From Macrostomum lignano (Eukaryota), in assembly GCA_002269645.1 (NCBI GenBank), contig NIVC01000175.1, forward strand, positions 310,001-374,000: DNA of 64,000 nt. Direction: 5' to 3'. Below, in pieces: positions 1,449 to 52,800 of the stretch. Position 1 is the first letter of the stretch, and each line of letters opens with the position of its first letter. Both the position numbers and the translations under genes were made by a program. The notes beneath the pieces were generated by a model. The model ran no database searches. It was not told the origin of the DNA and saw only the letters and a list, made by a program, of their open reading frames with translations.

Positions 1449-3245
1449 TCAAGTCCTCGTGTAGTCAGCGTCAGGCACGAGCAGAAGGTTCCGGCGATGG
1501 ACGACTAGTTCGGCTCGTCTAGCTCTCGGGTTAGGCAGTCTCCGTCGAATCTTGTAGACGACCTCGCCCTTGGGCTCGACGACTTCGTACAGTGCTTTGC
1601 GAGGTCGATGAAATTTTGCCGCTTCGTCCGGCTCGAGTACCGGGTGCTTGAGGAAGACCAGTTCACCGGGTTGAAGCTTCTTAGCGGCGGGCAGGTTCGA
1701 GTAGTGCTCGTCTGGCAGTTGCTGATGCAGATGCAGGCGCTCCTTGGCCAGCTCAGTCGCCTCGTTCAGGCGACGTTGGAAGTCCTTGACGTAGTCGGGC
1801 AGGTCGGCATACTCGGGCAGCTTCTTCAGCGCGTTGTCGATTGGAATTCGGAAATCACGGCCGAACACCAGGTAGTGAGGCGTGAAACCGGTCACCGGGT
1901 GCACGCTGGAGCGGAGAGCCATCAGACAAGCTGGAAGGAAGGTGTCCCAGTCGTTGTGGTTGCGCTCGATGAGGCTCGATGAGGAGGTGAGGACACTCTT
2001 TAGTTGTTTGTTGAGGTTCTCGACTTGTCCGTTGGAAGCTGGATTGTACGGTGTTTTTGTCGTATGCCGAATGCCAAACAGGTCGCAGAACTTCTTGAAG
2101 GCGGAACCGGTGAAGTCGGTGCCTTGGTCGGTGTGGATCCAGCATGGTACACCGAACTCAGGGATGAAGCGCTCTTGCAGAAGCTTGATGACTGTCTTGG
2201 CCTTCTGGTTTCTCATCGGGTAGGCGAATGGATACTTCGAAGTCGCATCGCACAAGGTCAGGATGTAGCGGTTGCCGCTCTTGCTCTTCTGCGCGATTGG
2301 TCCTACTACATCACAGTGGATTCTACCCAGAACTTCGCAGACTGGGAAGCTCTGGACCGGAACTCTCTCTCGCCGTCGCGATTTACTTTCAAGGCATGTG
2401 CGGCACTTACTGGTGAAGGTCTTGGTAGCACGGGCTAATCCGGGTCTCCAGAACCGTTCTCGTAGCCGCAGTAACGTCTTCGTCTCGCCGAGGTGTCCAC
2501 ACAGTGGCGAACTGTGGAGCTCCTGGAGCACTGGGGCGTCAAGGGCCTCAGGCAGAACAACCTTTGGCGGCTGCTGGCCATCGGACAGGTCAATCAGCAG
2601 CAGGCCGTTGTCCTCCTGCAGGTTCTCGTAGTATCCGACCAGATTCCGCTGCTCCTTCGTCAGTCGCAACCGGGCGTCGAACTCAGGCTTCGGGGCTTCG
2701 TTCTCGACCAGGTTGAGCACGTAGCTGATGGCTCTGTCAGCGCGTTGGGCGTCAACGAACTGTTGGTGAGTCATCGGCAGCTTCAGAAAATCAGTGAGCA
2801 CAGCGCGGCATGGCTGAGGGGTCCGGATTCCCGCAGTCTCCGCTTTAATGGTTCCAGGTCGATCACACGGCACTGTCTTGTCGGCGTCAGGATTAGGTCG
2901 CTCCGAGGGACTTTGTCTCACAACGTCGGCGTTCGTCCATTGATCACGTTTCGAAGTTCTCATCGTCGCTCTCTTGACAGAAAATTCCGCAGATGGAGCA
3001 GCGCGCATGCCTCCACTGCCTAGCCCAGGCGACTCTTGGCTGTAGGACGGGACGCAACACGTGAAGCACGCCTCGTCGCAGGCAGCCGTAGCCGTCGGCT
3101 CAGTCGTCGTCAAAATTGGGTGAGTCTTCTGCACTGGGCGGTGTCGCAAAGGGGGACTCGACTTTCCGCACAGGCAATGAGCAGCTGTCTGTTGGCCCGG
3201 GGGACAGAGCTTCGACCTTGCAGCGATTCTGGCCTCTGTCAACAC
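1449..3245 (-). CDS. Ty3/Gypsy-type (retroviral-like) integrase ORF
   Basis: HHCC zinc finger (HSSPLCGH...CRTC), DDE core (HCDVVGP, TDQG, GQVENLN), C-terminal GPY/F-like region (QPGELVFLK...KFHRPRKALYEV). First in-frame ATG at 3008. No RT or RNase H motifs upstream in this ORF. Confidence 0.93.
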   Translation of the reverse strand: MLTEARIAARSKLCPPGQQTAAHCLCGKSSPPLRHRPVQKTHPILTTTEPTATAACDEACFTCCVPSYSQESPGLGSGGMRAAPSAEFSVKRATMRTSKRDQWTNADVVRQSPSERPNPDADKTVPCDRPGTIKAETAGIRTPQPCRAVLTDFLKLPMTHQQFVDAQRADRAISYVLNLVENEAPKPEFDARLRLTKEQRNLVGYYENLQEDNGLLLIDLSDGQQPPKVVLPEALDAPVLQELHSSPLCGHLGETKTLLRLRERFWRPGLARATKTFTSKCRTCLESKSRRRERVPVQSFPVCEVLGRIHCDVVGPIAQKSKSGNRYILTLCDATSKYPFAYPMRNQKAKTVIKLLQERFIPEFGVPCWIHTDQGTDFTGSAFKKFCDLFGIRHTTKTPYNPASNGQVENLNKQLKSVLTSSSSLIERNHNDWDTFLPACLMALRSSVHPVTGFTPHYLVFGRDFRIPIDNALKKLPEYADLPDYVKDFQRRLNEATELAKERLHLHQQLPDEHYSNLPAAKKLQPGELVFLKHPVLEPDEAAKFHRPRKALYEVVEPKGEVVYKIRRRLPNPRARRAELVVHRRNLLLVPDADYTRT

Positions 3246-3283
3246 GGCGAGAAATCTCAGCGAAAGGCTCGGAGGGGTGGTAG

Positions 3284-4086
3284 TTAAATTGCGGTGACGC
3301 CAGCTGCTCCGGGCCGTGCGGTGCGGCCCTGACCCGCCGCGGCGTGAAAGCCGGGGTGGTTCTGCGGCAGACGGAGGGCTTTTTCGTAGGCGATGAGACA
3401 GAGTTGGTCACGCAGCGTCGCAACGGTGCACACACCGGCCTCGAGGTGCAGGGCCTCCGTAGGAGTGGTGCGCAGTTGACCTGATTCCTAAAATGACCAC
3501 GATTCAAAGCGCCTGGTTCTGTGCTCTTTAGAGGCGGGCGATCGCGGAGTCCGAGAGCCAGGGCATCCAAGCCAGAGCGGCATATGAGAGGATGCTGAGG
3601 AGAGAGCCTTGAAAGTGCGAAGGAGACTGTCTTTGGGCCACCCCCAGGACCTGGCAGCCAGGCAGGCCAGGAGGCGGCATCGGCTGTGGAGCGCACTGCA
3701 GACCTCGGCGACCTGTTTGCGGAAAGCCAGCGAGCGATCCAGATGGACGCCGAGGAAGCGTGGGCTATCATTAGCTGGGATCATGGTCTCGTTCAGCAGA
3801 ATGCGCGGGCGAGCCGAGGCCTCGTTGGTGTTGGAGGTGAACAGGGCGCATTCGCTCTTTTTGGCGTTGAGAACCGTCTTGTTGGCCGAGCTCCAGGTCG
3901 CGACCTGGGAGACCGCGGTTTGAAGGCGTTCGTTGGCCGTCGCGAGATTATTGTAGCGCGTGTGCAGGGCAATGTCGTCAGCGTACATCAAGATGGAGAT
4001 GTACGGTTGGACCGACGTCACCACCGGATCGATTTTGGAAAATGCCAAAAAGCAGCGGGCGATGACTGAGCCCTGGGGAGTCCTTG
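3284..4086 (-). mobile_element. Degenerate non-LTR retrotransposon (LINE) RT C-terminal fragment, I/Jockey-group-like
   Basis: LPQGSVI (frameshifted), MYADDIAL, LNAKKSE, PRFLGVHLDRSLAF, SWG, SILSYA..W, GQLRTTPTEALHLEAG; several frameshifts and stops. Confidence 0.88.
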
Positions 4087-7462: not shown

Positions 7463-9216
7463 ATGCCTGGAAGTACGCCAGCATCGCCAACTAAAGGAGT
7501 TGGTAAAACGGTTTCGAGCGACAAAGCACCACCGCTTGCGATCTCGTCGAAATCAGTCCAAGCGACAAAGTCGGCAACAGCGACAGCGCAGAACCCAAGC
7601 GCACAAGTATCGAGAGGACAGCAAGTTGACATCGAAAAACTCGATGAAAGTTCGAACTTCCAGAGGTAATTGGACCGATTCACACTGTGCAGCGAACTCA
7701 ACGGCTGGCAGGACGACACGAAAAACAAGCTGCTGCTGATGAAGCTCAGCACCAAGCTGTAGGACGCATTGGCAGATCGAGCCGCTCCCAAGAAGCCGGG
7801 AGAAAAGAGCTTCAATGAACTGACCAAACTACTGGCCAGCATCCTGGAACCAAAGACGTTCGTCATGGCTGAGAGATTCAATTTCCAGCATATCACTCGC
7901 ACGGCATCTATGAGCATTCGTGAGTATGCACAGCAACTCTGCATGCAGGCAGACAAGTGTCAGTTTGGCCTATCCAGAGATGAGAGACTGAGAGATCAGC
8001 TCGTATTCGGTTTGAATGACAAGGTGGCCATCAGCAAGTTATTGGAACAGGACTTCAGCACTCTCACGTTTGAGACAGCTATCAACATCGCTGAGGCGCA
8101 CCAGAACCTATCACAAACGCAAATACTAAAGGGTTGCACCAGTCAGCCGCAGTCTTCTGAAGTAATGAAAATTTCCGCATCGGTGGCCAGAGGCTCCCAC
8201 TCTACAAGCTCCAAGTGTGGCAGATGTGGCACAATGCATGGCTCCAGTGGAGGGTGTCCTGCGAAAGGAAAACGTGCAACAAATGTGGCATGCAAAACCA
8301 CTTCGCAACAGTTTGCAAAACGAAATCAACTGGTTTTGGCAAAGGCCGAAAATCGTTCAAAAGCCCGTCAGCATCTGGTCAATTTAGGCGAGCTGCAGTG
8401 TGGCCAAGGACCACAAGCTTTGTAGATGCAAGCGAAGCTGAACAGGAGGATTGTTTTCACATTCGACATCCCGTTGATAGCTACACCGTGCCTGTTAGGC
8501 TCAGACACACGAGCGGGTCGATGCTTAGCGTGAACGCACAAATCGATACTGGGGCAGGAGTTTCGGTAATGTCAAAAACGATCTGGAAACGATTGGGTTG
8601 TCCAAAGCTGACACCTACAGACACTGTTCTGACAACATACGCTGATACGCAGATGAAGGTCTTTGGAACACACGACACTGAGTTGGAGTACAATGACGAG
8701 TTCATTCCAATCACATTCTTCATTGTGGAATCGCAGAGGAACTTTGTTCTGGTTGGCCGAGACAAGCTCAATTTCACGCTAAACGCTGTAGACAACAGCT
8801 GCACATCGGCAACCCAGTCATGCGAATTTCCACCAGTAACTCTTAAGATCAAGGAAGGAACCACTCCAATTCATTGCAAACCCAGGCCGCTACCCTTCGC
8901 ACTCAGACAGGGAGTCAAGGATGAAATCGATCGGTTGCTTGAAGAAGACACCATCAAGCCCGTCAAGTTCAGTGAATAGGCCTCACCAATTGTCGTGGTC
9001 AAGAAACCTTCTGGAAAGCTCAGACTTTGCGTCGACTACAAGGTGACAATCAATTCTCATCTTATCAACGATTCATATCCGATGCCTGCACCTGACGAAG
9101 TGATTGCAACTGCTGCTGGCAGCCGGATATACACTCGTCTGGACCTAGAGAAAGCTTATCACCAGATCCCACTAAATGAAGCTTCCAAAGAGCTGACAGT
9201 AATGTCAACACCATTC
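7463..9216 (+). mobile_element. Degenerate, 3'-truncated Mag-type Ty3/Gypsy gag-pol (gag, two zinc knuckles, protease, start of RT)
   Basis: AERFNF, LRDQLVFGL, CGRCGTMH...C, CNKCGMQNHFATVC, protease IDTGAGVSV, RT PIVVVKKPSGKLRLCVDYK, LDLEKAYHQIPL, ends at STPF before YxDD. Stops at 7667, 7760 and 8977; frameshift near 8270. Confidence 0.93.
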
Positions 9217-9625: not shown

Positions 9626-11247
9626 ATGCAGCTGATAAAAAATGCATTGAGTGGCACATCAGCGCACGGTCTGTCAAGAGTTACGTCCAACAAGCCAATC
9701 TACGTTCGATTAACTTGGTTCGATTCCTAATTATGTTTGGCCTGTTTCTCAAAGGACTCGTTGAGTTCGTGGAGAAGTTGCGGGTGAAGAAAGTAACCAG
9801 CTCGATAGAATCTGACGGTGTTAAGTTTCGATTTCCGGACATATTTGCCTGCTTTGAGAATCCCATCTCTAGCAGCTATTCGGCCACATTGGACTACGCC
9901 ACAGCTTCTGCTATTAATACCAGCTTCAGTATGGTTGATAAAGAGCTCCAGTTTCATGCCATTAAAGAAAACCTATCTCAAGAGAATACTGCAAAGCTGA
10001 TGATTGAAAATAGCTTTGTCTATGTGTTTGGGTTGTCTTATAAACTTTTGTTTGACTCGTTGGCTCATCGAGTTGAGCAGTCGTTGATCTCTAGCACCAT
10101 TGTCTACATGAGCGAAATCGGTGACGCTAAATTAGCAGAGATCGAAGCTTATCCGTTTAACCATTCGCAGTACCTTCGCTGCCTACGTTGGACCATCAAC
10201 AGAACTTGGCAGGATAAAATGACTACAGTCGAAGCGTGGGCCGGACTCACTATCACCTTGCTGTTGGACACTAGCGGCTCCTTGCTGGAGCTCAAAGGTG
10301 GTTATAAAATACCGCGTAGAACTTTCATTCCGGACGGCTCGGAGATCCCGATATCTGATTGGACTCTAGCAATCAAGGACTACAAACAGGCTGACAGGCC
10401 GATTGGACTGAAGGTGTTTTTGAGTCCACCTGGCGAATATCCTTCGGACTTTGTGAGTTCATTCTCTCTTGGCCCGGGTAGATATCACACTGTGGAAATC
10501 AAAATGTCAGCTTACTCCTTCAAGGAGGATCAATTTAAGTGCATTGGCGACGACCATCCCGCTATTCAGTTCACTAATCCGTACGATCTGTCTGCCTACA
10601 GCCATGTGTATAGCTACTCCTACTGCTACTACTATGAATACCACCGTTTGAACCAGCTGCTGTTAAACCTATCTGGTAACATCAGTCCTTTACCATGGCC
10701 CCTGAGAGATTTCAAGTACATGTTTAACATATCTTCAAGGCCGCACTACGGTAGCATGGATTACGAACAATCGGTGTGGGACCAGCAAGGAGAGCTGGCC
10801 GAGCAAATTCGAGAAACCTGCAAGCAGAAGCGACCCTGCAGCACGCTGGACTACAGTGCCAGCATATCCAGCGCTGACTAGCCCACGCACAGCTCTCTGG
10901 CTCCTTTTATCAACAGCTCAGTAAGGCAGGCTTGAATGCGAGCCAAATACAGGAACCTCAGCGTACCAGCTCTTGACTTTTTGCTAACTAGCAACTCTTC
11001 CCGTGTTGCCTCGTACGTCCGCGACAATCTGTTAAAAGTGCACTTCAAGCCTAGCAGCGTCAGTAGCGACAAAGTCACATTCTCTATCGACTACGGATTT
11101 TCAAATTTCGTCTCGGAAGTTGGCGGCATCATGGGCATCTACTTAGGCATGTCGTTGCTGACCCTATGCGAGCTGCTGGAACTGCTGTACGACATTTTTG
11201 CACGATATTGTTTGAAGAACGACAATGAATTGCCTGCTGAAAAGTGA
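9626..11247 (+). pseudogene. Intronless DEG/ENaC (amiloride-sensitive channel family) gene, disabled
   Basis: ATG at 9626, TSAHG motif and RLTWF, frameshift near 9722 into TM1, FPDIFAC, then TAG at 10879 (at the expected W of WP) and TGA at 10933, TM2 FVSEVGGIMGIYLGMSLLTLCELLE. Confidence 0.88.
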
Positions 11248-11711
11248 CCCTCTTAAATATGAATAAAAACTCTGTCAGTACCGTTGAATTCCCTGTAAAC
11301 AAATTGTGAGCAGTTTATCGAGATTTTAACTAAGCTAGAATAAAGTTCATAACGCCTCTATGGTGTGGAGATTGGAAATTCAATTTTTAAAATCTGTTTT
11401 AATCTGAAAAAAGTGACGAACGACTTTTGCTAACTATTTGTCAAGTGAAAACGCTGTCTGTAAAAATCTTTCTGAAAAGTTATCTTATCTACTATTCGGT
11501 ACAAGTGCAAACTTTGCCCAGTCAGTCACTAAACTTTTCCAGTCAACTGTCATCCAGGTTAAACAATAGTGTTGAGCAAAATATAAAATGAATTTTTCTG
11601 CAAAATATTATTGCTCTCGCTCTATTTTGCCGAGCTTAACGATAAATTTAGCTTGACTGTTGAGCGTATCGTGCTTTTTTAACAGCAAGTATTCTGTAAA
11701 GCTTTGAAGTG

Positions 11712-14700
11712 ATGAATATTAGTAAGCTTCCTATTAAAGAGCTTTCAATTCAAATAGATTCAAGTCTGTTGGAACCCAATTGCATTGGAATTGACTTTGG
11801 TAAGTCAGCAAAATTTGGGCGCCAGTTTGAGTGGTTCAATGCCATTTATGCTGTTGGGTGCCACTTACACTATCTACGTGTCATTCTTACTTGTTGAGTC
11901 GATTCACACTGCCATCAAATGAGCCAAAAAATTACATGACCAATGTACGAGCTACACAGGGATAAATTTTGGTGTACAAGTCGTGTGATCACACGAAATC
12001 TGGCCATATTTCATGGCTGTGTGAGCCAGCAAATTGGATGTCATGTTAGTTTATAAATGGTACTCATCTAGAGACAAAAACTGAGTGCTTCGTGTATTTT
12101 GTCGTAGACAGTAATAATGAAATATCAAACAGCGCTGATTTTTAGTTTGAGTCTTGAGATCAGCATACAACAAATGGGATGTCATTTATAGTTCTCGTAG
12201 TTTCATGTACGCTACCGTTGCTTTAATATCTCTTCGCAACCTATATTACATTTTCAATCGACTGCAAGGCACTGAACGCACAAAGCTTGCGTACCCTTCG
12301 GCCTGCATCGATTCCGAATCTACTAAAAAGTACACCGCGAACTTTGCAACTTTCGAGACCTACGAAAAGACCGGCGCTGAAGTTTTAATTAAATACTTAA
12401 CTGATAAACTACCTGATTTAAAGTCTGACTCCAGCAGCGGCCGCAAAAACTGGAAGGTGCGAGTAACGGGAGCCAGGGCTACCCAAGCTGCCGCGGACTC
12501 GATAAAACAACAATTGGGACTCGAGTGAGGACTTTGGGACTTTGTGTACTAGCTAGCTAGCAAGTAGAATCGTATCATGACTTGTTTCCCCGGCTGGCAG
12601 AAAGAAAATCGAGCCCGTTAATGGCCATAGACATGTTATAACCCACCTAAAGCATTAGCAACTACCAAAAACTCAGCCAGCTACCATAGACAACTTGCAA
12701 ATAACCTTTTCGGGACACTTGATTAAATTTGCGCTTAAGAACGATTTGTTTGTTGTAATCACAGAGTTGCAAATCAAAATTCTGAGTAGCCTACTCTTCT
12801 GGTGAAACAAGTTAGTAGAAATATCAGCAAATGGATGTAGATAAAGGCTTAAGTAATTTTGTAGATTAAATTGCAATGGAAATGGGTATTTGAAATGCCT
12901 GTTTGTGGTCAGACATAGCATTCAGTCGTCATTTTCCTGTGTGGGCCTTGTTATCTAATAGTTAGCAAAGTTACAATTTGTCTATTCCTAGCAGTAGCTG
13001 AAGCGCATATGTTTTTTCTCCCTAAAACATATTCAAAGTACAAAGTCAGAAAAAAACTCAAACAAAGCATCCAGTGAGAATCGTTTCAATTTTATTTATA
13101 GGATCAGCTTTGTCGATGAGGCATCGAGCCAGTGTCGTGGCGCCAGCTTTCTGATGACTCGCTGCGATTCCGCCGACACCGCCTACCCGGCGCCGTTCAT
13201 TGACCCCGCCGAGTTCGCCGGTCTGGAGCACGGCGAGACATTTAAGAAGTTTAACGAAGCTCAAGTCGACCTCATGTCCGGCGACTCAAAATTTCCCTGC
13301 CTGTTGGGCGTGTTTGGCTCAATTTGTCGGGTGTTCTTAGTGAGTGCTTGAGCTCGTGCAGTTTCGTCTATTTATATTTCAGTTTTATTTACGCCTGTGA
13401 AGATTTCTCTCCATCTCACTCCCCTATTCCAATCTCCATCTCACTCCCCTATCCCAATCTCCATCTCACTCCCCAATCCCAATCTCCATCTCACTCCCCT
13501 ATCTTAATCTCCATCTCACTCCCCAATCCCAATCTCCATCTCACTCCCCTATCCAAATCCCATCTCACTCCCCTATCCCAATCATCTCACTCCCCAATCC
13601 CAATCTCCATCTCACTCCCCTATCCCAATCTCCATCTCACTCCCCTATCCCAATGTCCATCTCACTCCCCAATCCCAATCTCCATCTCACTCCCCTATCC
13701 CAATCCCTATCTCACTCCCCTATCCAATCTCCATCTCATTCCCCTATCCTATCCTAATCTCCATCTCATTCCCCTATCCTATCCCAATCTCCATCTCACT
13801 CTCCTATCCAACTCCAATCTCATCTCAGTCCCTATCCTAATCTTCATCTCACTCTCTGCCTTACTGTCGATCTCTATTGGAAAATATGTCTAGAGACAAC
13901 TCAAAGTAAATATTTTTAAATGTTTGCATTTCTACTTACAGCAGTAGCGTAGTAAGTAGTTAGAAGAAAAATATTTTCTCTATAATTAACTCTCAGTTGC
14001 AGGAAGATGGTCGGGGCGAAGAGGTGCACACGCAAAATCTGTCTGGCAAGAGCTTCTTAGGCATCTGCCAGTTGTTCACCGGGGTCAGCGACTACTCAGC
14101 GCTGATGTCCATGGCGGCTGCTGGCAAGCGGGGCAACATCGACTCGCAGATCCGCGATCTGCTGGCTGACATGAAGAACTCTCCGTACGGACGTCTGCCC
14201 CCATCTCTTGCCGTGTTTCCGTTTGGCAAGGCAGTTGACAACGACAAATCTTGTGAGCGGGTTGACAGCCACGCTGTCAGTTATACTGTCACACTGTCAT
14301 CTATACTGTCATGCTGTCACCTATACTGTCATGCTGTCATCTATACTGTCATACTGTCATCTATACTGTCATGCCGTCATCTATACTATCATGCTGTCAT
14401 CTATACTGTCATACTGTCATCAATACTGTCATACTGTCATCTATGCTGTCATATTGTCATCTATACTGTCACTGTCATCTATACTGTCATGCTGTTATCC
14501 ATACCGTCACGCTGTCATCTAAACTGTCATACTGTCACATATCCTATCATACTGTCATCTATACTGTCATGCTGTCATCTATACTGTCATACTGTCACCT
14601 ATACTGTCATACTGTTATCTATACTCTCACACTGTCATCCATACTGTCATTCTGTCATCTATACTGTCACACTGTCATCTATAAAACTGTCATGCTGTCA

Positions 14701-16928
14701 TCTATACTGTCATGCTGTCATCTATACTGTCACACTGCCATCTATACTGTCACTGTCATCTATACTGTCATGCTGTCATCTATACTATCATGCTGTCATC
14801 TATACTGTCATACTGTCATCTAAACTGTCATACTGTCATCTATGCTGTCATACTGTCATCTATACTGTCATGCTGTCATCCATACCGTCACGCTGTCATC
14901 TAAACTGTCACTGTCATCTATACTGTCATGCTGTCATCTATACTATCATGCTGTCATCTATACTGTCATACTGTCATCTATACTGTCATACTGTCATCTA
15001 TGCTGTCATACTGTCATCTATACTGTCACTGTCATCTATACTGTCATACTGTCATCTATACTGTCATGCTGTCATCCATACCGTCACGCTGTCATCTAAA
15101 CTGTCATACTGTTATCTATACTGTCATGCCGTCACCTATCCTGTCATACTGTCATCTATACTGTCACTGTCATCTATACTGTCATACTGTCATCTATACT
15201 ATCATGCTGTCATCTATACTGTCATACTGTCACATATCCTATCATACTGTCATCTATTCTGTTATGCTGTCATCTATACTGTCATGCTGTCATCTGTACT
15301 GTCACGCTGTCGTCTATACTTTCATACTGTCATCCATACTGTCATACTGTCATCTATTCTGTTATGCTGTCATATATACTGTCACACTGTCATCTATTCT
15401 GTTATGCTGTCATTCACCCACCCATTTATTCTTTCTGCTAATTGGTATGTCTAGAAAAGCGGAAAACTATAGGCGCACCTCAGCCCTCTTTGAAAGTGAA
15501 TTCCAATGCAACTCGTCAATCGCACTAATTAGCAGTTCTACTAATCCACTTATTGCAAATAATCCAACCTGCTCAAAAAAATTAATTTTCCAGTCGAAGA
15601 CACCCGACCGCAAGACCTGGTCCATTCCCTGGTGGCCACTTTTACGTCTAATCTCATCTACACAGTCACCCAGATGGCCCTGTTTTACAGAGCCCGGAGT
15701 ATTCGATTCGCTGGCGGCTTTTTTAACCACGAATGTCCTCGGGCCGAGCTGATCAAGACTGGCAAATTATTCACCGCCATTGTGAGCGACTGGCTTGCTG
15801 TATGGGACACTGGGAGGACACTGGGAGGACACTGGGAGGACACTGGGAGGACACTGGGAGGACACTGGGAGGACACTGGGAGGACACTGGGAGGACACTG
15901 GGAGGACTAGGGGAAGAGATGGGGAGGCAGGAGAGATGGGGAGACAGGTGAGATGGGGAGACAAGTGAGATGGGGAGGCAGGTGAGATGGGGAGACAGGT
16001 GAGATGGGGAGACAGGTGCGATTGGGAGACAGGAGAAATGAGATAGGTGAGAAGAGACAGGTGAGATGGGGAGGCAGGTGAGATGGGGAGGCAGGTGAGA
16101 TGGGGAGGCAGGAGAGATGGGGAGACAGGTGAGATGGGGAGACAGGTGAGATGGGGAGGCAGGAGAGATGGGGAGACAGGTGAGATGGGGAGGCAGGAGA
16201 GATGGGGAGACAGGTGAGATGGGGAGACAGGTGAGATGGGGAGACAGGTGAGATGGGGAGGCAGGAGAGATGGGGAGACAGGTGAGATGGGGAGGCAGGA
16301 GAGATGGGGAGACAGGTGAGATGGGGAGGCAGGTGAGATGGGGAGGCAGGAGAGATGGGGAGACAGGTGAGATGGGGAGACAGGTGAGATGGGGAGGCAG
16401 GAGAGATGGGGAGACAGGTGAGATGGGGAGGCAGGAGAGATGGGGAGGCAGGTGAGATGGGGAGACAGGTGAGATGGGGAGACAGGTGAGATGGGGAGGC
16501 AGGAGAGATGGGAAGACAGGTGCGATTGGGAGACAGGAGAAATGAGATAGGTGAGAAGAGACAGGTGAGATGAGATAGGAGATGGGACAGGTGAGATGAG
16601 ACGGGTGAGATGAGACGGGTGAGATGAGACGGGTGAGATGAGACAGGAGAGATGAAAAAATTCAGATAAGACAGGGAGATGAAATAGGTGAGTAGGGATG
16701 TCTAAGGCAAATAATGCCAGATGATTAAAACTTGATTTAGCTTAACTTTAACCATAGCATTCAATTTATATTAAACAGAAAGCCCTTTCAACTGAATCGA
16801 ATTTGAATTCCAAAATCATTCACCACACATTCAAACTTTGCACCGTTCAGGACTCGATGGACGTGGAATTTTTCAAGATTGACCAAATCGCGGCTCTGGG
16901 GGCGATGCTGCGAGAAATTTCTACATAG
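11712..16928 (+). CDS. Type II pantothenate kinase-fold (Fumble/PanK-like) protein, 367 aa; exons 11712-11799, 12269-12524, 13102-13339, 13997-14252, 15594-15781, 16851-16928
   Basis: All five introns are GT-AG with matching phases (1,2,0,1,0); spliced length 1104 nt with no internal stop. Collinear with PANK3: IGIDFGTERTKLAY, VTGARA, VDE..QCRGASFL, FPCLLGVFGS, SFLGICQLFTG, QDLVHSL, FAGGFF, ALGAML. Confidence 0.85.
13406..13850. repeat. 25-bp minisatellite in PanK-like intron 3
   Basis: Unit TCTCCATCTCACTCCCCTATCCCAA. Confidence 0.92.
14283..15412. repeat. About 20-bp minisatellite in PanK-like intron 4
   Basis: Unit ACTGTCATCTATACTGTCAT with variants. Confidence 0.95.
15804..16660. repeat. 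Adjacent 11-bp and 17-bp minisatellites in PanK-like intron 5
   Basis: GGACACTGGGA to about 15905, then GAGATGGGGAGACAGGT variants. Confidence 0.95.
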
Positions 16929-21255: not shown

Positions 21256-27752
<6,497 letters not shown>

Positions 27753-28519
27753 GACTGCTGCTGTCCCGAAGGCCAAGTCAGAATTTCACTGCTCCATTTG
27801 GCAGGCGCGTCTGCTGCATGCGGCAGGACAAGATGGAAGTCATTAATATTCAGAGCCGGCAACAGGAAGAGATGTCTACTCGGGGATCCGGAGACGAAGA
27901 GGACGCGACCTCTGAGCGGCACGCACAAGCATGCCCAGTTCCTTGCGATCTCCTCGTCTCCGATTCTGTCTTTCTTTCTCTCTGGCTCGATTTGACGCCA
28001 AATTCGATGACCCCAAAAACCGGAGGCCGGAATTAAAATTTTAAATTCCAATATACGGAAACGAATTTGAGCGAGCGAAGCAACACGACGGCTGCGTTGG
28101 CGTCTGAAATATCGGGTTGGTTGATACTCCTCTCGGATGCTCTTCCTGCTGTTTTCCTTGTGCCGGTCTTCTTTCTTGATTATTTTCTGCACCAAAGCCT
28201 GCAGAAGCGATGATGCTGCATCTCTTCTTAGGCTGGGGCCAATCATAGCTCACCTACGAAGTCCGCCCCCCTGTCACAGTGCAGCGCTATGTCCCACAAA
28301 ACTACCCAGCAACACAAACCAAGGCTCCCGCGTACTGCCCGCATTTACACGGGCAATGAAATTTGCAGAGCCTCCTGGCTCACAATAAGATTATGAATCA
28401 TTTTAATCGATGCGCTCATTTTATCCACATTACTGATGTGCATTGTTAATTTTATGCACATTTCTATTAATTTAAATCGTACTTACGCTCGTACAAATCC
28501 AGATTTTATTTGTTCACTC

Positions 28520-32429: not shown

Positions 32430-35418
32430 CTAGACACTAGGCAGCTTATACCCAGAGTGAATGCAACACACTCCAGGCCAGAGAACTTCATAATTAACAG
32501 CAGAAAATCCAGCCTCTCGCATCATATTAGCAAACAATGTCTGATGAGGGAATCTACGAATACTTTCAACTAGGTATTCGTAGGAGTCCCAGTCTCCGGC
32601 TACTAGCAGGCCCATCGGAGGAATCACTCGGAAGCTGTACTCGTCATACAAGATCGACAATAGAGGATTTTCAACCGAGCAGAACTCCAAGCAGGCAAAC
32701 CGGCCGTAGGGCTTCAAAACTCGATGAGCCTCTCGCAGTACGCCAGGCAGATCTGTGCAGTTCCGCATTCCGAAAGCGATGGTGTACAAATCGCTAGAGG
32801 CCTCGTCCAATGGCAGAGACTCAGCCCGGCCTTCCAGCCATTGGATTGAGCTGGCGAATGTTGAGCCTTTAGCCGAAGCTTTCGCACTGCCAACCTGCAT
32901 CATGGATGGGCTGGGGTCCACCACGCTCACTGTGCAACTGGCCGGCGCTTCCGCTTCGGCAGCGGCTGTTTGACGTTCTGCGGCCTCTCGGAATGAGTCC
33001 ACACTGCGTGTAGACAGGGGGATAGGCTCTGGCTGAGGGAGCGCGATAGCTGATCTCATATGCCCAGCAACTGAGGATCTGGGAGGCTGGTTGCCTGGCA
33101 ACTGAAGATCTGGGAGGCTGATTGCCTGGCAACTGAAGATCTGGGAGGCTGATTGCCTGGCAACTGAGGATCTGGGAGGCTGGGTGCCTATAGCAACAGA
33201 AGATCTGGGAGGCTGGTTGCCTTGCAACTGTACTTCTGGGAGGCTGGTTGCCTTCAGCAACAGAGGATCTGGGTGGCTGCATGGTTGCCTAGCAACTGAG
33301 GATCTGGAGGCTGGTTGCCTAGCAACTGTAATTCTGGGAGGCTGGTTGCCTATAGCAACTGAAGATCTGGGAGGCTGATTGCCTGGCAACTGAGGATCTG
33401 GGAGGCTGGGTGCCTATAGCAACAGAAGATCTGGGAGGCTGGTTGCCTTGAAACTGTACTTCGGGGAGGCTGGTTGCCTTCAGCAACAGAGGATCTGGGT
33501 GGCTGCATGGTTGCCTAGCAACTGAGGATCTGGAGGCTGGTTGCCTAGCAACTGTAATTCTGGGAGGCTGGTTGCCTACAGCAACAGAGGATCTGGGTGG
33601 CTGCATGATTGCCTAGCAACTGAGGATCTGGAGGCTGGTTGCCTAGCAACAGGGGATCTGGGAGGTTGGTTGCCTGGCAACAGGGGATCCGGGAGGCTGG
33701 TTGCCTGGCAACAGGGGATCTGGGAGGCTGGTTGCCTGGCAACAGGGGATCTGGGAGGCTGGTTGCCTATAGTAACAGAAGATCTGGGAGGCTGGTTGCC
33801 TAGCAACTGTACTTCTGGGAGGCTGGTTGCCTATAGCAACTGAAGATCTGGGAGGCTGATTGCCTGGCAACTGAGGATCTGGGAGGCTGGGTGCCTATAG
33901 CAACAGAAGATCTGGGAGGCTGGTTGCCTTGCAACTGTACTTCTGGGAGGCTGGTTGCCTTCAGCAACAGAGGATCTGGGTGGCTGCATGGTTGCCTAGC
34001 AACTGAGGATCTGGAGGCTGGTTGCCTAGCAACAGGGGATCTGGGAGGTTGGTTGCCTGGCAACAGGGGATCCGGGAGGCTGGTTGCCTGGCAACAGGGG
34101 ATCTGGGAGGCTGGTTGCCTGGCAACAGGGGATCTGGGAGGCTGATTGCCTGGCAACTGAGGATCTGGGAGGCTGGGTGCCTATAGCAACAGAAGATCTG
34201 GGAGGCTGGTTGCCTTGCAACTGTACTTCTGGGAGGCTGGTTGCCTTCAGCAACAGAGGATCTGGGTGGCTGCATGGTTGCCTAGCAACTGAGGATCTGG
34301 AGGCTGGTTGCCTAGCAACTGTAATTCTGGGAGGCTGGTTGCCTACAGCAACAGAGGATCTGGGTGGCTGCATGATTGCCTAGCAACTGAGGATCTGGAG
34401 GCTGGTTGCCTAGCAACAGGGGATCTGGGAGGTTGGTTGCCTGGCAACAGGGGATCCGGGAGGCTGGTTGCCTGGCAACAGGGGATCTGGGAGGCTGGTT
34501 GCCTGGCAACAGGGGATCTGGGAGGCTGGTTGCCTATAGTAACAGAAGATCTGGGAGGCTGGTTGCCTATAGCAACAGAAGATCTGGGAGGCTGGTTGCC
34601 TAGCAACTGTACTTCTGGGAGGCTGGTTGCCTAGCAACTGAGGATCTGGGAGGCTGGTTGCCTAGCAACAGAGGATCTGGGAGGCTGGGTGCCTAGCAAC
34701 TGAGGATCTGGGAGGCTGGGTGCCTAGCAACTGAGGATCTGAGAGGCTGGGTGCCTAGCAACTGAGGATCTGGGAGGCTGGGTGCCTAGCAACTGAGGAT
34801 CTGAGAGGCTGGTTGCCTAGCAACTGAGGATCTGGGAGGCTGGTTGCCTAGCAACAGAGGATCTGGGAGGCTGGTTGCCTAGCAACTGAGGATCTGGGAG
34901 GCTGGTTGCCTAGCAACAGAGGATCTGGGAGGCTGGGTGCCTAGCAACTGAGGATCTGGGAGGCTGGGTGCCTAGCAACTGAGGATCTGAGAGGCTGGGT
35001 GCCTAGCAACTGAGGATCTCTCACCTGCCGTCCCCGGGCGCTACCCTGACAGGAGGTGGCGCCCTTCCAGGCAGCTTTCGACTCCACTCCAGCAGTCCCA
35101 GCGCAATGTCACCGGTGCCTCCGGCCACGTCGACAACTCGCCAACCTGGCCGAGGATTCGCCGAAGCAACGAACCGCCTCTTCCAGCACCGGTGCAGGCC
35201 AGCGCTCATCAAGTCGTTCATCACATCGTAACTGTTTGACACCGGTTGAACACCTGGTTGACTCGGTCCTGCTTCTGGCCCGGTTCAACTTCTTCGAAAC
35301 CGAACGAAGTGTCGAAGCCGCCTGGCTGATGGACTTGACGGCGGGCGACACCAAAGCAGCTGCTGCTGCTGGTTGCCGGGCTGCGGCTGATGCAGCGGAG
35401 AAGCTGACGGCATTGCAT
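32430..35418 (-). CDS. COQ5: Ubiquinone biosynthesis C-methyltransferase COQ5 (UbiE family); exons 35418-35025 and 33078-32430; 1-nt frameshift near 35243
   Basis: [91 protein letters not shown]. Spliced length 1043 nt, one short of a full frame. Exon 2 acceptor chosen by phase match. Confidence 0.92.
33061..35020. repeat. About 31-bp minisatellite forming almost the whole COQ5 intron
   Basis: Unit GGAGGCTGGTTGCCTAGCAACTGAGGATCTG with higher-order variant blocks. Confidence 0.96.
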
Positions 35419-40646: not shown

Positions 40647-41418
40647 TTATTTTTCCAATTCATCGCAACCTCTCGTTTGCCAAGCGTGAATGGCCGCCCC
40701 AACCGCCTGTTGCAGAGTCTGCTTCACCAGTTGCTGCTCCTGCTCAGTAGCTGTGGGATTTTTCAATTCAACAGCGAATCCGCTCCACTTCAACGGGTAA
40801 TCATCCGGTGTAGCGGACTTCAGAGCCTCGAGCTGTCGCTGGGAAACTGGCAAAGTAGCCGAGTAGGCGCAAGTTTCCTCATCAGCATCATTAGCAGCAT
40901 CATCACCAGTCTCAGCGACCGCAGTCGGTTCAACAAGACAGACGCAGTAGACCTGACAGAAGTGATCTGGGGTCGGTTCGACCACTCCGCGGCAAATAGA
41001 CACCGACATGGGCAGCTTGCAAGCTGAGGAATCCTCCAACTCAAACTCGCTAGCAGCCGCCGTGGCTCGAACTCGTTCAACCAGAGCTCGCAGACGCTGC
41101 TGACAAGCCAACCTGAGCGAGCTGAACCCTAGCGGAGTTGGCGCCAGACCAGTCGGCGCGTCAGTCACGGCGCCAACAACAGCCCGACCAAAACTGCGCT
41201 GGATTGCTAGCCTAGCGGCCGCTTCGTCTGTTTTATTATCAACAGCCAGAGCGACTCGACAGTCGCCGCCGGTCAGCAGCAGAGCCTGCATTCCCGCCGG
41301 GTCCAAGCTGCCAATCACAGACTCCATGCCGCATCTGGTCTTCTCCATCGCTTTGGAGACGAAAGCGCTGGTTGATGCAGACAGCCAGCTGCCCCAGCCA
41401 CTGCTCTGATGTTGCTGC

Positions 41419-41453
<35 letters not shown>

Positions 41454-41723
41454 AGAACTTGAAGAAGAAGAAGCTACAGAGGCAACAGTCGGAGGAGAAA
41501 CAGACGCTGTTGCTTTCGGAGTCTCTGTTTGCTGTTGCTTCTGTTGTTGCTTTTGCTGTTGCTGTTGCTGCTGCTGCTGCACAAGAGTGACAGTGGGAGG
41601 AGGCGGCAGCTCGGGGCCCAGCAGAGTGGCAAAGCCTGTAGTAGTGGAAGCAGCAGTCTGACCGCTAGCTTGAGCTTCCTCACTGCTTACTATGACCAAA
41701 TCTTCTGGTGTCTCTTCTAGCAT
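40647..41723 (-). CDS. PRRC1: PRRC1-like protein (YjjX/NTPase I-T-like domain), single exon, 358 aa, with polyQ tracts
   Basis: GWGSWL..VSKAMEKTR.GMESVIGSLDP.GM...L.TGGD, FGRAVV, LAPTPLGF, ATPDDYPLKWSG match PRRC1 family blocks. Confidence 0.85.
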
Positions 41724-49840: not shown

Positions 49841-52800
49841 ATGTTACAAAATTGTATAACTCTGATTTCCACACTATGGCCGATTTTACTAGCAGTTAGC
49901 CAAGACAGTCAACCAACAGTGACTTTCTACACCAAAGAAGAGATTCCTATTGGCAACGAAATTGGCAATTTAAAGACGCGATTCAGCTACCCAGATGGCA
50001 GCCAATTCAACATGCTGTTCCCGGATTCAGAGATCAGACGTCTGTTCCGACTGGACAGTCGCACAGGAGCCTTGAGCACCATCGCTAGGTTAGATCGCGA
50101 AGTGCTTTGCCCGAACAAACCGCTGGAGTGCCTGCGCACATTTAATGTCGAGGTGAAACGAGGTGGCACAGGTCAAGAAGAGGTCATCGTCATTCGCCTC
50201 ATAATTAACGATGTAAACGACCAGCGACCAAAGTTCGAGGCTAAGCATAAAAAGTTTCGCATTAGCATACCGGAATCCGATAATCCGCCTAGCTACTACT
50301 CGCTACCAACTGCAGAAGATGGCGATTCGGATAGATACGACCATGTCAAATACGATTTAAAAATGATTGGCGACGCAGGGATGTACTTCAAATTGTTTTT
50401 AGAAGAGCGCGGTAGCAAGAGAGTGCCAAAACTCGAGCTAACTAAAGCTCTGGATAGAGAAACTAAAGACAATTATGAGCTTCAACTATTAGTTAGCGAC
50501 GAACAGCATCCGGAAGATCAAGATAGCGCCGACATTCAAATAGAAGTTTTAGACGCTAACGATAATAAGCCACAATGGCGTCTAGCAAAGCAGTCGATAA
50601 CAATATCCGAGTGCGACAGATTGCACCGACCTTTGCTAAAACTAAACGCAACAGACGAGGACTTGAACGAAAGAATCACGTACAGCATCGGCAAAGCGGC
50701 TGGGAAAGACGTGGCTAAGTCGTTTTACATTAGCGGAGACAAACTGAAACAGAATCAGTCACTTGACTATGAAAAAATACGCAAAAAGGTGTTATACATA
50801 CCTCTAGTTGCGGAGGATAGAGGCGGCTCGACTGTTGAAACCTACGTTGAATTACGCGTCACCGATTGCAACGATCACTATCCAAACATAACGGTGGAGA
50901 TGATTGAGGACAAAATTTTGGAAAACGACGAAACAGAAAAGGTGCTAGCGCGAATTCTAGTAGTAGACGAAGATGAAGGAAACAACGGCACGGTTGACTG
51001 CGTAATTGGCGTCCCTAACAAGCGGAAATTCCAACTGACTAATAGAATAACAGACGGTCAATACAAAACAATTTACAAGCTAAAGAAATTGGCTCACGTT
51101 TCCTTCGACAGAGAGGCAACATCGGGCGGAGAGGTTAGAGTCGACATAATCTGCACGGACAAGGGCGACAGTCCACGAGTCGGTCGTAAGGAAGTCAAAA
51201 TAATGATACTAGACGAAAACGACAATGCACCGAGAATAGAATCCAAGCTTTACACGTTTCGTATTCATGAGAACAGTCCGCCAAACACGCTAGTTGGCCG
51301 AGTGACGGCCAGAGATGACGATATTGACGAGAATGCGCGGCTAAAGTTTAGCCTACACAGCGACGGATCGAGAAACTTTGTAATCCGCAATCAGGGCAAC
51401 AACATGGCGGAAATCTACTCAGCTGTCAGCTTTGATAGAGAGCAGATCGATCACTACAGATTCACAGTCACTGTAGCGGATAGCGGACTCAAAGAGCAGA
51501 GAACTTCAACAGCTACCGTAGAGGTGACCATTGTCGATGAAGACGATTCAGTGCCGACATTTCAGTTTCGCGAATACATGTTCAGAATAGAAGAAGACTA
51601 CGGAAGAAACCTATCGAAGCGCTACATTGGCGAGGTGAAAGCAACAGACGCCGATATTGGCGCTAATCAAATGATCTGGTATGAAGTAAACCGGCAGTAC
51701 CAAGCCAGCCTAGCAGACGTTGGCATATCTGGTATGTATTTCTACTTTAATGGAAGCCACCTGTACGGCGAGGGCAATTTCGATCGCGAGAAGCAGGAGA
51801 TAATCAACCTGGAGATATTCGCTAGAAATCGCGGCCCAGCAAAGCACAAAGGCTCGGCCAGGGTTACTATTACACTGAACGACGTCAACGACAATGCGCC
51901 GAGTATTCAAGGCCTGCAAAAGGTGTACAATCTATCGGAGAACAGTCCAGCTGGCACGCCTGTCTTGCAAGTGAGCGGCACAGACCTGGACGCTGGAGAG
52001 AACGGCACGCTCACCTACATACTAGACGAAACCGAAGCCAACCGTTTCACAATAGACGGCAAACACGGCATAGTCACTCTGAGCGGTAGTCTAAAAAACA
52101 ACCAACCAGAAGACGGCTTTCAATCGCAGACCTACCGGCTAGGCATTGGCGTTCGCGATAACGGCAATCCACCGCTGCATAGCATCAAGTACACAACATT
52201 TGTACATGTCAGCTCCGGCCAGGCGTCTGAGCACGGTCGCCGGGTCAATCAAGCGACAAAGCCGGGTAATCGAGCCGGCGGTGGCGGAGGACAACGAGGA
52301 GTTGAAATTTTGAAAACGGACCAGAATCTGCTCATTCTACTCTGCTTGGCCGCCGTAGTCTTCATTGTCTTTGTTGCGCTGTTAGTGATTCTACTATACG
52401 TTCACGCCAGAGGTGAGTAAAAAAACACTCAATAATTTGCACAAAAGGAACATAGATACAAAAATTATTCTTCCATTTCATTTTCAATAGGCCGACGTAC
52501 AGCAAGAAATCGGACCCGACATCCAGGAGTTTGGTACGACAAAGCCAACGGCGACACGGTGAGTAGAGTAAGAGTAATCACTGTTTTACACCTTTGCAAG
52601 TAGTTTAGTGGATATCATTTACAAACGAAACAAACATATCGGTCAGTACCAGTACAGTAGGATACCGTGCGCCCACATACATGCGCAACCTTGGGAATCA
52701 CCTGGCCGTTTCTATTGGCAACACATTCATGTAAGTCGCTATTGGCTGAGAGCAGTCACGTGACTACTATTCTGTCCAATAGCGAGTTACATGTGTGCGT

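What the first reader, a model, noticed from the sequence alone, without database searches (positions are those of the whole stretch)
11712..16928. Intact stand-alone PanK-fold gene with remodelled active site: candidate pseudokinase or new ASKHA enzyme
Seen: six exons splice in phase to an uninterrupted 367-aa protein that aligns locally without gaps to type II PanK. The Gly-rich loops are replaced: DIGGTL to DFGTER, TGGGA to TGARA, NIGSGVS to VFGSICR, KRVTGTSLGGGTF to EEVHTQNLSGKSF. Equivalents of PANK3 D17, G19, K24, E138 and S192 are kept, but R207 becomes E and S195 becomes R. Known: E138 is the catalytic residue, R207 and S195 line the pantothenate site, and PANK4 is a pseudokinase through loss of E138 and R207 but is fused to a phosphatase domain. 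Inference: this protein has no phosphatase domain, may still bind nucleotide, and either phosphorylates a different substrate (the S195R/R207E pair looks like a charge swap) or regulates real PanK as a dimer partner or acyl-CoA sensor. The ORF track hides the gene by running exon 4 into an intronic repeat.
Basis: partly seen in the sequence, partly recalled or inferred. Interest (0 to 1): 0.72.

Follow-up and report, generated by a model that had tools for sequence, protein, structure and literature searches.

The report
Divergent flatworm pantothenate-kinase-like gene
This is an intact gene of the flatworm Macrostomum lignano, kept by selection, for a protein with the pantothenate kinase fold but no usual vitamin-binding arginine; it is one fast-evolving member of a larger uncharacterised family, so it is moderately interesting rather than unique.

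Summary
Six GT..AG exons (11712-16928, + strand) splice to a 367-aa protein. It is identical to M. lignano UniRef A0A1I8H4T5 and matches Pfam Fumble over its full length (E 3e-25). The AlphaFold model (pLDDT 88.5) hits yeast Cab1 and human PANK1-3.

It belongs to a clade of stand-alone PanK-like proteins of about 365 aa, with six paralogue groups in M. lignano. Most other members are unnamed environmental or SRA transcripts. Sister clades include annelid and nemertean proteins.

Loss of R207, G20, G116 and Y254, and G216K, is shared by the whole clade. Specific to this gene are S/T21E, an Arg inserted in the second Gly loop, G/A193I, S195R, R207E and N322G. The phosphoryl-transfer core (D17, G19, K24, D137, E138, S192) is kept.

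A collinear second copy gives dN/dS 0.26 (p = 2e-4 against neutrality). Copies of the sister paralogue give 0.04-0.06.

The protein fails the TIGR00555 equivalog cut-off (78 versus 248 bits). It is most likely not a pantothenate kinase. Whether it is a retargeted kinase or a pseudoenzyme remains open.

The parts
11712..11799 (+). Exon 1: start ATG to the first base of codon G30 (phase 1). It encodes the start of the first phosphate loop, D28-F29-G30.
   Evidence: same intron position and phase as paralogue P0002
12269..12524 (+). Exon 2. It carries the rest of the DFGTERTK loop (T31 E32 R33 T34 K35) and the second Gly loop, TGARA, at 12466-12480.
13102..13339 (+). Exon 3. It carries D120-E121 (PANK3 D137/E138) at 13115-13120 and FGSICR (PANK3 IGSGVS) at 13313-13330.
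13997..14252 (+). Exon 4 (256 nt; an alternative acceptor lies 6 nt downstream at 14003). It carries E203 (PANK3 R207) at 14021-14023, LSGKSF at 14039-14056, MAAAGKRGNID, SPYG and FPFGK.
15594..15781 (+). Exon 5 (188 nt). It carries AGGFFNH (PANK3 VGNFLRV) at 15710-15730.
16851..16928 (+). Exon 6, ending at stop TAG 16926-16928. It carries the C-terminal ALGA motif.
13408..13854 (.). 25-bp minisatellite inside intron 3.
14274..15413 (.). 20-bp minisatellite (57 copies) inside intron 4. It stays open in the exon 4 frame and produces the misleading 485-aa ORF 13997-15454.
15805..16692 (.). 11-bp and 17-bp minisatellites inside intron 5.

Best explanation
The locus is a functional gene of Macrostomum lignano (group Mlig027024) encoding a 367-aa stand-alone protein with the type II pantothenate kinase (Fumble/ASKHA) fold.

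It belongs to a lineage-expanded clade of about 365-aa PanK-like proteins. As a group, these have given up the canonical pantothenate carboxylate clamp: R207 is replaced by hydrophobic residues, S195 is variable and Y254 is lost. They carry a conserved Lys/Arg in place of the third Gly of the GGGTF loop. They still keep the phosphoryl-transfer core: Asp and Lys of the first phosphate loop, the Asp-Glu catalytic pair, the Gly-Ser of the third loop, and GGN..R.

Within this clade the window gene is a fast-evolving daughter of a duplication that also gave Mlig031449. It further changed the loops around the substrate and phosphate site (S/T21 to Glu, an Arg inserted in TGxGG, G/A193 to Ile, S195 to Arg, R207 to Glu, N322 to Gly). 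Selection still holds it, in two collinear copies.

My reading is that it is not a pantothenate kinase. Most likely it remains an ATP-dependent small-molecule kinase, or at least a nucleotide-binding enzyme, whose substrate pocket has been retargeted. In this reading the Arg191/Glu203 pair occupies the place where pantothenate's carboxylate would sit.

Shown: gene structure, fold, clade membership, residue states and selection. Inferred: retained catalysis, altered substrate and the ion pair.
For: Gene model and identity.

Fold: Pfam Fumble E 3e-25; AF2 pLDDT 88.5 with Foldseek top hits Cab1 and PANK1-3.

Clade: 713 homologues in the exhaustive HMMER search. The best full-length hits are stand-alone proteins of 360-377 aa that score far above canonical PanKs against the P0001+P0002 profile. 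The NJ tree separates them from canonical PanKs. Six M. lignano groups were found: Mlig027024, 031449, 027093, 022685, 003467 and 007788.

Residue states: D17, G19, K24, T114, G115, D137, E138, G191, S192, G215, Y258 and G321 are kept in the target and in at least 21 of the other 25 clade members (D137 in 14 of 25). R207 is absent from all 25 other clade members but present in 30 of 32 canonical sequences.

Retention of the catalytic polar residues over about 57% sequence divergence from the sister argues for continued chemistry.

Selection: 15 nonsynonymous versus 17 synonymous differences between the window copy and L002, dN/dS 0.255, binomial p = 2e-4 against neutrality. All odd motifs are identical in both copies.

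Not a canonical PanK: TIGR00555 equivalog score is 77.6 bits against a cut-off of 247.6, while PANK3 scores 378.6. R207 hydrogen-bonds pantothenate, and S195 and R207 line its site.

The GenBank model of the collinear copy comes from an RNA-seq-guided transcriptome annotation.
Against: Three of the four Gly-rich loops are more degenerate than in any close relative. The target keeps only 74% of clade-conserved columns, against 89% for its sister.

Its lineage has changed 1.5-3 times faster than the sister lineage. Its dN/dS is about 5 times that of the sister gene's copies, 0.26 versus 0.04-0.06, though this contrast is only borderline (Fisher p 0.05-0.09).

A Glu at the S/T21 position and an Ile at 193 could block nucleotide binding, which would make it a pseudoenzyme.

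There are no biochemical data and no direct RNA-seq check of this copy. No substrate can be named. The presence of a canonical PanK in the genome was not verified.
Confidence: 0.45

Rival explanations
1. It is a pseudoenzyme. The protein has lost nucleotide binding or catalysis and is kept for a non-catalytic role, for example as a dimer partner that modulates its better-conserved sister (Mlig031449) or another PanK-fold protein. This would resemble the heteromeric PanK1/PanK2 complex of apicomplexans, or the PANK4 kinase-like domain.
For: Target-specific loss of glycines and insertion of charged residues in the phosphate loops (DFGTER, TGARA, GSICR). Accelerated evolution relative to the sister. 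Relaxed but still purifying selection. PanK-II enzymes are obligate dimers whose active site is built across the interface, and heteromeric PanKs with individually incomplete sites are documented. Many co-existing paralogues could supply partners.
Against: The catalytic Asp-Glu pair, the P-loop Asp and Lys, and the Gly-Ser are all retained. The documented pseudo-PanK, PANK4, lost E138. No complementary pattern of residue loss between the target and its sister was seen. No interaction data exist.
Confidence: 0.35
2. It is a true pantothenate kinase with an unusual active site. The clade could be the organism's real PanK, with Lys212 or other basic residues replacing R207.
For: The fold and catalytic core are conserved. 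The clade has gained a conserved Lys/Arg at the G216 position, close in sequence to R207. I could not show that a canonical PanK exists in M. lignano (searches gave none).
Against: It fails the TIGR00555 equivalog cut-off by 170 bits. R207, S195 and Y254, which bind or frame pantothenate, are all changed. In this gene the R207 position is acidic. Six paralogue groups are hard to explain by one housekeeping step. From general knowledge, animals, including planarians, carry canonical PanK genes; pk1 is used as a planarian marker.
Confidence: 0.07
3. It is a decaying duplicate with no function, and its reading frame is intact only by chance.
For: It is the fastest-evolving member of its pair. It lies in a repeat-rich region of a recently duplicated genome.
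Against: Two collinear copies are both intact over six exons, with all ten splice sites conserved. dN/dS is 0.26, p = 2e-4 against neutrality. Clade-invariant residues are retained. The collinear copy was annotated from transcript evidence.
Confidence: 0.04

Closest known systems
Eukaryotic type II pantothenate kinases (human PANK1-3, yeast Cab1, Drosophila fumble; Pfam PF03630, TIGR00555)
   Same: Same two-domain ASKHA fold and similar size (about 360 aa catalytic core). Both are stand-alone. It shares the P-loop Asp/Gly/Lys, the Asp-Glu catalytic pair, the Gly-Ser of NIGSG, G321 and Y258.
   Different: Only 16-19% identity. It scores 78 bits against the 248-bit equivalog cut-off. R207 becomes Glu, S195 becomes Arg, Y254 becomes Leu, and G20, G116, G117, G193 and G214 are lost. 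Lys sits at G216, the IYGG motif is replaced by a DxxNSPYG loop, and N322 and R325 are lost.
PANK4 kinase-like domain (pseudo-pantothenate kinase of amniotes)
   Same: A PanK-fold protein that lacks the R207 equivalent and is predicted not to phosphorylate pantothenate.
   Different: PANK4 also lost the catalytic Glu (E138V) and is fused to a DUF89/ARMT1 phosphatase that carries its known activity. This protein keeps the Glu and has no second domain.
Apicomplexan PanK1/PanK2 heteromeric complex
   Same: Several PanK-fold paralogues occur in one genome. Some have individually incomplete pantothenate-site residues, which suggests function as heterodimers.
   Different: The apicomplexan proteins split the canonical residue set between two partners and together form a pantothenate kinase. 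Here neither the target nor its sister has R207, and no complementarity is visible. No interaction evidence exists.
Uncharacterised stand-alone PanK-like clade (M. lignano Mlig031449, 027093, 022685, 003467, 007788; unnamed soil-metatranscriptome and SRA transcripts; sister clades with Owenia fusiformis CAH1779408.1 and Tubulanus polymorphus XP_074658065.1 and XP_074660866.1)
   Same: The target nests inside this clade, sister to Mlig031449 (43% identity). It has identical intron positions and shares the clade signatures GKSFLG, AAxGxRGN(I/V)D, SPYG and FPFGK.
   Different: It is the more derived member of its pair. It lacks the clade's DRGC(S/T)LTK, TGxGG, GS(G/A)xG and GGN..R consensus at E32/R33, R99/A100, I189 and G321/N324.

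Membership tests
ASKHA superfamily / Pfam Fumble (PF03630) homologue | Significant full-length match to the Fumble profile, and a two-domain PanK-II fold | tested here: met
   89.4 bits against a 28.5-bit cut-off, profile positions 4-333 of 334. AF2 pLDDT 88.5; Foldseek prob 1.00 to Cab1, PANK1-3 and SaPanK, TM 0.57-0.68.
Type II pantothenate kinase (functional equivalog, TIGR00555) | Score above the curated equivalog cut-off | tested here: not met
   77.6 bits against a 247.6-bit cut-off. Human PANK3 control scores 378.6. All clade relatives tested score 51-136.
Type II pantothenate kinase (functional equivalog, TIGR00555) | Catalytic Glu (PANK3 E138) with the adjacent Asp, and P-loop Asp17/Gly19/Lys24 | tested here: met
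   E121, D120, D28, G30 and K35 are present. E138A is catalytically dead in PANK3.
Type II pantothenate kinase (functional equivalog, TIGR00555) | Pantothenate-binding Arg207 and Ser195 | tested here: not met
   R207 becomes E203 and S195 becomes R191. R is present in 30 of 32 canonical sequences and in 0 of 25 other clade members.
Type II pantothenate kinase (functional equivalog, TIGR00555) | Gly-rich loops DIGG(T/S), TGGGA, NIGSGVS and LGGGTF | tested here: not met
   The target has DFGTE, TGARA, FGSICR and LSGKSF. One Gly per loop survives.
Type II pantothenate kinase (functional equivalog, TIGR00555) | Pantothenate kinase activity, or complementation of cab1 or coaA | not testable with these tools
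   Needs biochemistry or genetics.
PANK4-type pseudo-pantothenate kinase | Loss of the catalytic Glu138 | tested here: not met
   E121 is retained. PANK4 carries E138V.
PANK4-type pseudo-pantothenate kinase | C-terminal DUF89/ARMT1 phosphatase domain | tested here: not met
   The protein ends at residue 367. Pfam finds only Fumble, and the annotated collinear gene is Fumble-only. Fused examples score clearly for PF01937.
Stand-alone PanK-like clade ('class II', defined here) | Groups inside the clade in a tree, sister to Mlig031449, and shares intron positions | tested here: met
   NJ tree. 43% identity to P0002. Five of five intron positions and phases are identical.
Stand-alone PanK-like clade ('class II', defined here) | Clade consensus motifs: D-R-G-C-S/T-L-T-K, TGxGG, GS(G/A)xG, GGKSF, GxRxNVD, SPYG, FxFGK, GGN..R | tested here: inconclusive
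   The target keeps 34 of 46 clade-conserved columns (74%), against 89% for the sister. GKSF, GKRGNID, SPYG and FPFGK are kept. The phosphate-loop motifs are degraded.

The most novel reading that the evidence does not exclude
The stand-alone clade may be a previously unrecognised family of small-molecule kinases derived from PanK. The clade comprises six paralogue groups in M. lignano, many unnamed eukaryotic transcripts, and sister clades in annelids and nemerteans.

Its members have swapped the pantothenate carboxylate clamp (R207) for a hydrophobic wall plus a new Lys/Arg in the GGG loop. They would therefore phosphorylate a different metabolite, for example a carboxylate-free pantothenate derivative such as pantetheine, or an unrelated alcohol.

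The window gene would then be a further-specialised member, either with a third substrate specificity or a regulatory subunit of such a kinase.
Probability: 0.3. Interest if true: 0.7.

Novelty: new variant of a known kind. Interest (0 to 1): 0.45.

Why it matters
PanK is the gatekeeper of coenzyme A synthesis. The open question in that field is why many organisms keep extra, seemingly inactive PanK paralogues.

This locus shows that at least one animal lineage carries a whole radiation of stand-alone PanK-fold proteins. They keep the catalytic machinery but not the pantothenate clamp, and even the most derived copy is under purifying selection. That makes the family a tractable test case for two alternatives: a new enzyme or a pseudoenzyme.

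M. lignano has RNAi and transgenesis. If a new substrate were found, it would add a reaction to pantothenate/CoA-related metabolism, or to ASKHA kinase chemistry. If the proteins are regulators, it would extend the heteromeric-PanK idea beyond Apicomplexa.

As it stands, the gene is already in the databases as a 'hypothetical protein', and nothing here proves a new activity.

Tried and rejected
1. A 365-aa model using the acceptor at 14003. I rejected it in favour of 13997, because the paralogue and the collinear copy have a 256-nt exon 4 and the clade alignment needs the two extra residues.

2. An exact look-up of P0001 in assemblies found nothing.

3. A word-indexed search with the 22-sequence alignment returned only 3 proteins, an artefact of the candidate cap. 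The single-sequence search with P0006 added only one more M. lignano paralogue and unnamed transcripts. The taxonomic range of the clade outside Macrostomum therefore stays largely unknown.

4. I looked for a canonical PanK of M. lignano. No tool searches that genome. Three canonical-type cluster representatives turned out to be environmental or SRA contigs, not M. lignano. This point is untested.

5. I looked for expression data or any mention of the Mlig gene ids in papers and supplements. Nothing was found. There is only indirect support, from the RNA-seq-based origin of the GenBank annotation.

6. Domain fusions among longer homologues, as functional hints, showed only canonical PanK or PanK-DUF89 architectures.

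7. dN/dS against the 43%-identical sister was not attempted, because synonymous sites are saturated. I used the 97%-identical collinear copy instead.

8. The R191-E203 salt bridge could not be measured, because model coordinates are not exposed.

9. Yao et al. 2019 on PANK4 is not in the library. It is cited only through.


Full report
**What is in the sequence**

The window is Macrostomum lignano DNA. The spliced product of the finding is identical to UniRef A0A1I8H4T5. The region 9.2-24.2 kb is collinear, at 84-96% identity, with contig NIVC01000251.1 of assembly GCA_002269645.1.

The six exons 11712-11799, 12269-12524, 13102-13339, 13997-14252, 15594-15781 and 16851-16928 all have GT..AG borders. 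They give an open 1104-nt CDS of 367 aa. A tandem acceptor 6 nt downstream (14003) would give 365 aa. I prefer 13997 for three reasons:
- The paralogue Mlig031449 (locus L001) has introns at the same five positions with the same phases (1,2,0,1,0).
- Its exon 4 and exon 5 lengths are the same, 256 and 188 nt.
- The collinear copy L002 has the same structure, with all splice dinucleotides kept.

Introns 3, 4 and 5 are filled with minisatellites. There is only one copy of the gene in the window.

**Fold and residue mapping**

Pfam Fumble matches end to end (89 bits, E 3.3e-25). PDB sequence searches reach PANK1/PANK3 at E 1e-9, or 3e-14 with a two-sequence profile. An AlphaFold2 model built on a 22-sequence family alignment has pLDDT 88.5 and pTM 0.88. 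Its best Foldseek matches are yeast Cab1, human PANK1/2/3 and S. aureus type II PanK (E 2e-18 to 4e-13, TM 0.56-0.68, 14-19% identity).

I checked my PANK3 reference sequence and its numbering against PDB 3sms/5kpr and aligned it with 97 homologues.
- Kept: D17/G19/K24 as D28/G30/K35, D137/E138 as D120/E121, and G191/S192 as G187/S188.
- Changed: S195 to R191, R207 to E203, TGGGA to TGARA (with one inserted residue), and GGGTF to SGKSF.

E138A is catalytically dead and R207 hydrogen-bonds pantothenate. E138, S195, R207 and V268'/A269' contact pantothenate, and Y254'/Y258' brace the site. Amniote PANK4 carries E138V and R207W and is fused to a DUF89 phosphatase.

**It is not a one-off**

An exhaustive HMMER search of 1.84 billion cluster representatives, with a profile of the target and its nearest paralogue, found 713 homologues. 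The best-scoring ones are full-length matches to stand-alone proteins of 360-377 aa. They score far better than canonical PanKs against this profile.

A neighbour-joining tree on 325 columns places the target as sister to Mlig031449 (P0002, 43% identity). Both lie inside a clade of such proteins that is separate from canonical PanKs. I call this clade 'class II'.

Cluster look-ups show six M. lignano paralogue groups in class II: Mlig027024 (the target), 031449, 027093, 022685, 003467 and 007788. Most are present in 2-4 near-identical copies.

Other class II members are unnamed. One example, P0006, occurs as polyadenylated transcripts of 35% GC in several JGI metatranscriptomes and in SRA assemblies. 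Neighbouring divergent clades include 'uncharacterized' proteins of the annelid Owenia fusiformis and the nemertean Tubulanus polymorphus. I found no paper describing this family.

**What is ancestral and what is specific**

Comparing column states in 25 other class II members, 21 sequences of the neighbouring clades and 32 canonical sequences splits the features three ways.
- Clade-wide features: G20 to Cys/Ser; G116 to Val/Ala; S195 variable; R207 replaced by Val/Pro/Met/Phe (0 of 25 keep Arg, against 30 of 32 canonical); Y254 to Leu/Phe/Val; G216 to Lys/Arg/Gln; and a DxxNSPYG loop in place of IYGG.
- Conserved across the clade and kept in the target: D17, G19, K24, T114, G115, E138 (21 of 25), G191, S192, G215, Y258 and G321.
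- Specific to the target lineage: the S/T21 position is Glu32, followed by Arg33; the second loop is TGARA with an inserted Arg99; G/A193 is Ile189; S195 is Arg191; R207 is Glu203; N322 is Gly321; R325 is Asn324.

The target retains 34 of 46 clade-conserved columns (74%), against 89% for its sister. Relative-rate counts against 11 outgroups show 1.5-3 times more changes on the target lineage. Eight of these 11 comparisons have p < 0.05.

**Selection**

The collinear copy L002 (PAA87033.1, Mlig027024g1) differs from the window gene by 17 synonymous and 15 nonsynonymous substitutions. That gives dS 0.070, dN 0.018 and dN/dS 0.255, and the nonsynonymous deficit has p = 2e-4. None of the 15 replacements touches the unusual motifs.

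The three copies of the sister gene give dN/dS 0.04-0.06. The contrast with the target is suggestive but only borderline (Fisher p 0.05-0.09).

The GenBank annotation that contains PAA87033.1 was derived from a genome-guided RNA-seq transcriptome. This is indirect evidence that the six-exon mRNA exists. I could not check reads directly.

**Interpretation**

The protein fails the curated equivalog threshold for type II PanK by a wide margin: 77.6 bits against 247.6, with PANK3 at 378.6. It also lacks the residues that hold pantothenate. I therefore do not file it as a pantothenate kinase.

It differs from PANK4 in keeping the catalytic Glu and in having no phosphatase domain. All the polar phosphoryl-transfer residues have survived about 57% divergence from the sister, and purifying selection is ongoing. 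This makes me favour a still-active, retargeted kinase (0.45). The pseudoenzyme or dimer-partner reading is close behind (0.35), supported by the degraded glycine loops and the faster rate.

S195 and R207 both touch the pantothenate carboxylate in PANK3. In the model, the equivalent residues lie on neighbouring strands of one hairpin (E190-195 and E201-207). An Arg191-Glu203 ion pair filling that site is therefore plausible, but it is an inference. The sister has Gly and Val there, so the 'charge swap' is a late, lineage-specific event.

A true PanK (0.07) and neutral decay (0.04) are unlikely.

**Limits**

I could not search the M. lignano genome for a canonical PanK, see RNA-seq reads, obtain model coordinates, or name the organisms behind most clade members.

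**Verdict**

This is a new variant of a known kind: an uncharacterised PanK-derived subfamily, of which this gene is a derived member. Interest is moderate.

Noticed in passing
window 13996-14003: Tandem acceptors 6 nt apart (cag|TTGCAG|GAAG) at the start of exon 4. They could give 367-aa and 365-aa isoforms, with or without Leu-Gln. Paralogue comparison favours the upstream site.
   Followed up: partly
window 11676-11686: A polypyrimidine-AG motif (ttttttaacag) lies 26 nt upstream of the start ATG. It could be a spliced-leader trans-splice acceptor; 39% of M. lignano genes are reported to be trans-spliced.
   Followed up: no
window 9715-10881 (+): A 388-aa ORF matches the amiloride-sensitive sodium channel family (Pfam ASC, E 6e-12). 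It is probably a large exon of a DEG/ENaC channel gene, immediately upstream of the PanK-like gene on the same strand.
   Followed up: partly
window 1449-4048 (-) and 7769-8979 (+): Retroelement remnants. On the minus strand there is an integrase (rve plus Integrase_H2C2) and a reverse-transcriptase fragment. On the plus strand there are gag-like and aspartyl-protease ORFs.
   Followed up: partly
window 21256-27776 (-): Exons of an ionotropic glutamate receptor (ANF_receptor and Lig_chan-Glu_bd domains in the 26046-27776 ORF). ORFs that look like channel-domain exons lie at 23512-24189 and 21256-22401, but Pfam found nothing in 21256-22401 and 23512-24189 was not scanned.
   Followed up: partly
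window 32430-33389 (-): An exon encoding a COQ5/UbiE methyltransferase (Pfam Ubie_methyltran, E 5e-53). At its upstream end the ORF runs into the 31-bp minisatellite at 33061-35019. This is the same ORF-masking effect as in the PanK-like gene.
   Followed up: partly
window 49841-52420 (+): A single 859-aa ORF with at least five cadherin repeats and a transmembrane segment, that is, a protocadherin-like gene. A 154-aa ORF at 53276-53740 may be its cytoplasmic tail.
   Followed up: partly
window 40647-41723 (-): A 358-aa ORF with long poly-Gln runs and no Pfam match. It is conserved-looking outside the repeats. Function unknown.
   Followed up: no
whole window: There is an extreme load of minisatellites: 46 TRF rows (overlapping rows can describe the same array), with periods of 4-177 bp and arrays up to 2 kb. 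Many keep long ORFs open in several frames, so ORF length is a poor guide to genes here.
   Followed up: partly
L001, L013, L014 (M. lignano Mlig031449 g1-g3) and L002: Homeologous or duplicated copies share exon structure but differ greatly in intron length. The Mlig031449 gene spans 3.5, 6.7 and 14.3 kb, and the target spans 5.2 versus 4.7 kb. For the target pair the extra length lies mainly in the intronic repeat arrays; the Mlig031449 introns were not inspected.
   Followed up: partly
P0003, P0004, P0009, P0024, P0161, P0164 (database proteins): Several UniRef entries for these paralogues, from the older ML2 assembly, are frameshifted, truncated or fused gene models. One example is a 900-aa 'protein kinase domain' fusion. 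Automatic names also vary (Glucokinase, Ppx-GppA, FGGY_N). Database names for this family are unreliable.
   Followed up: partly
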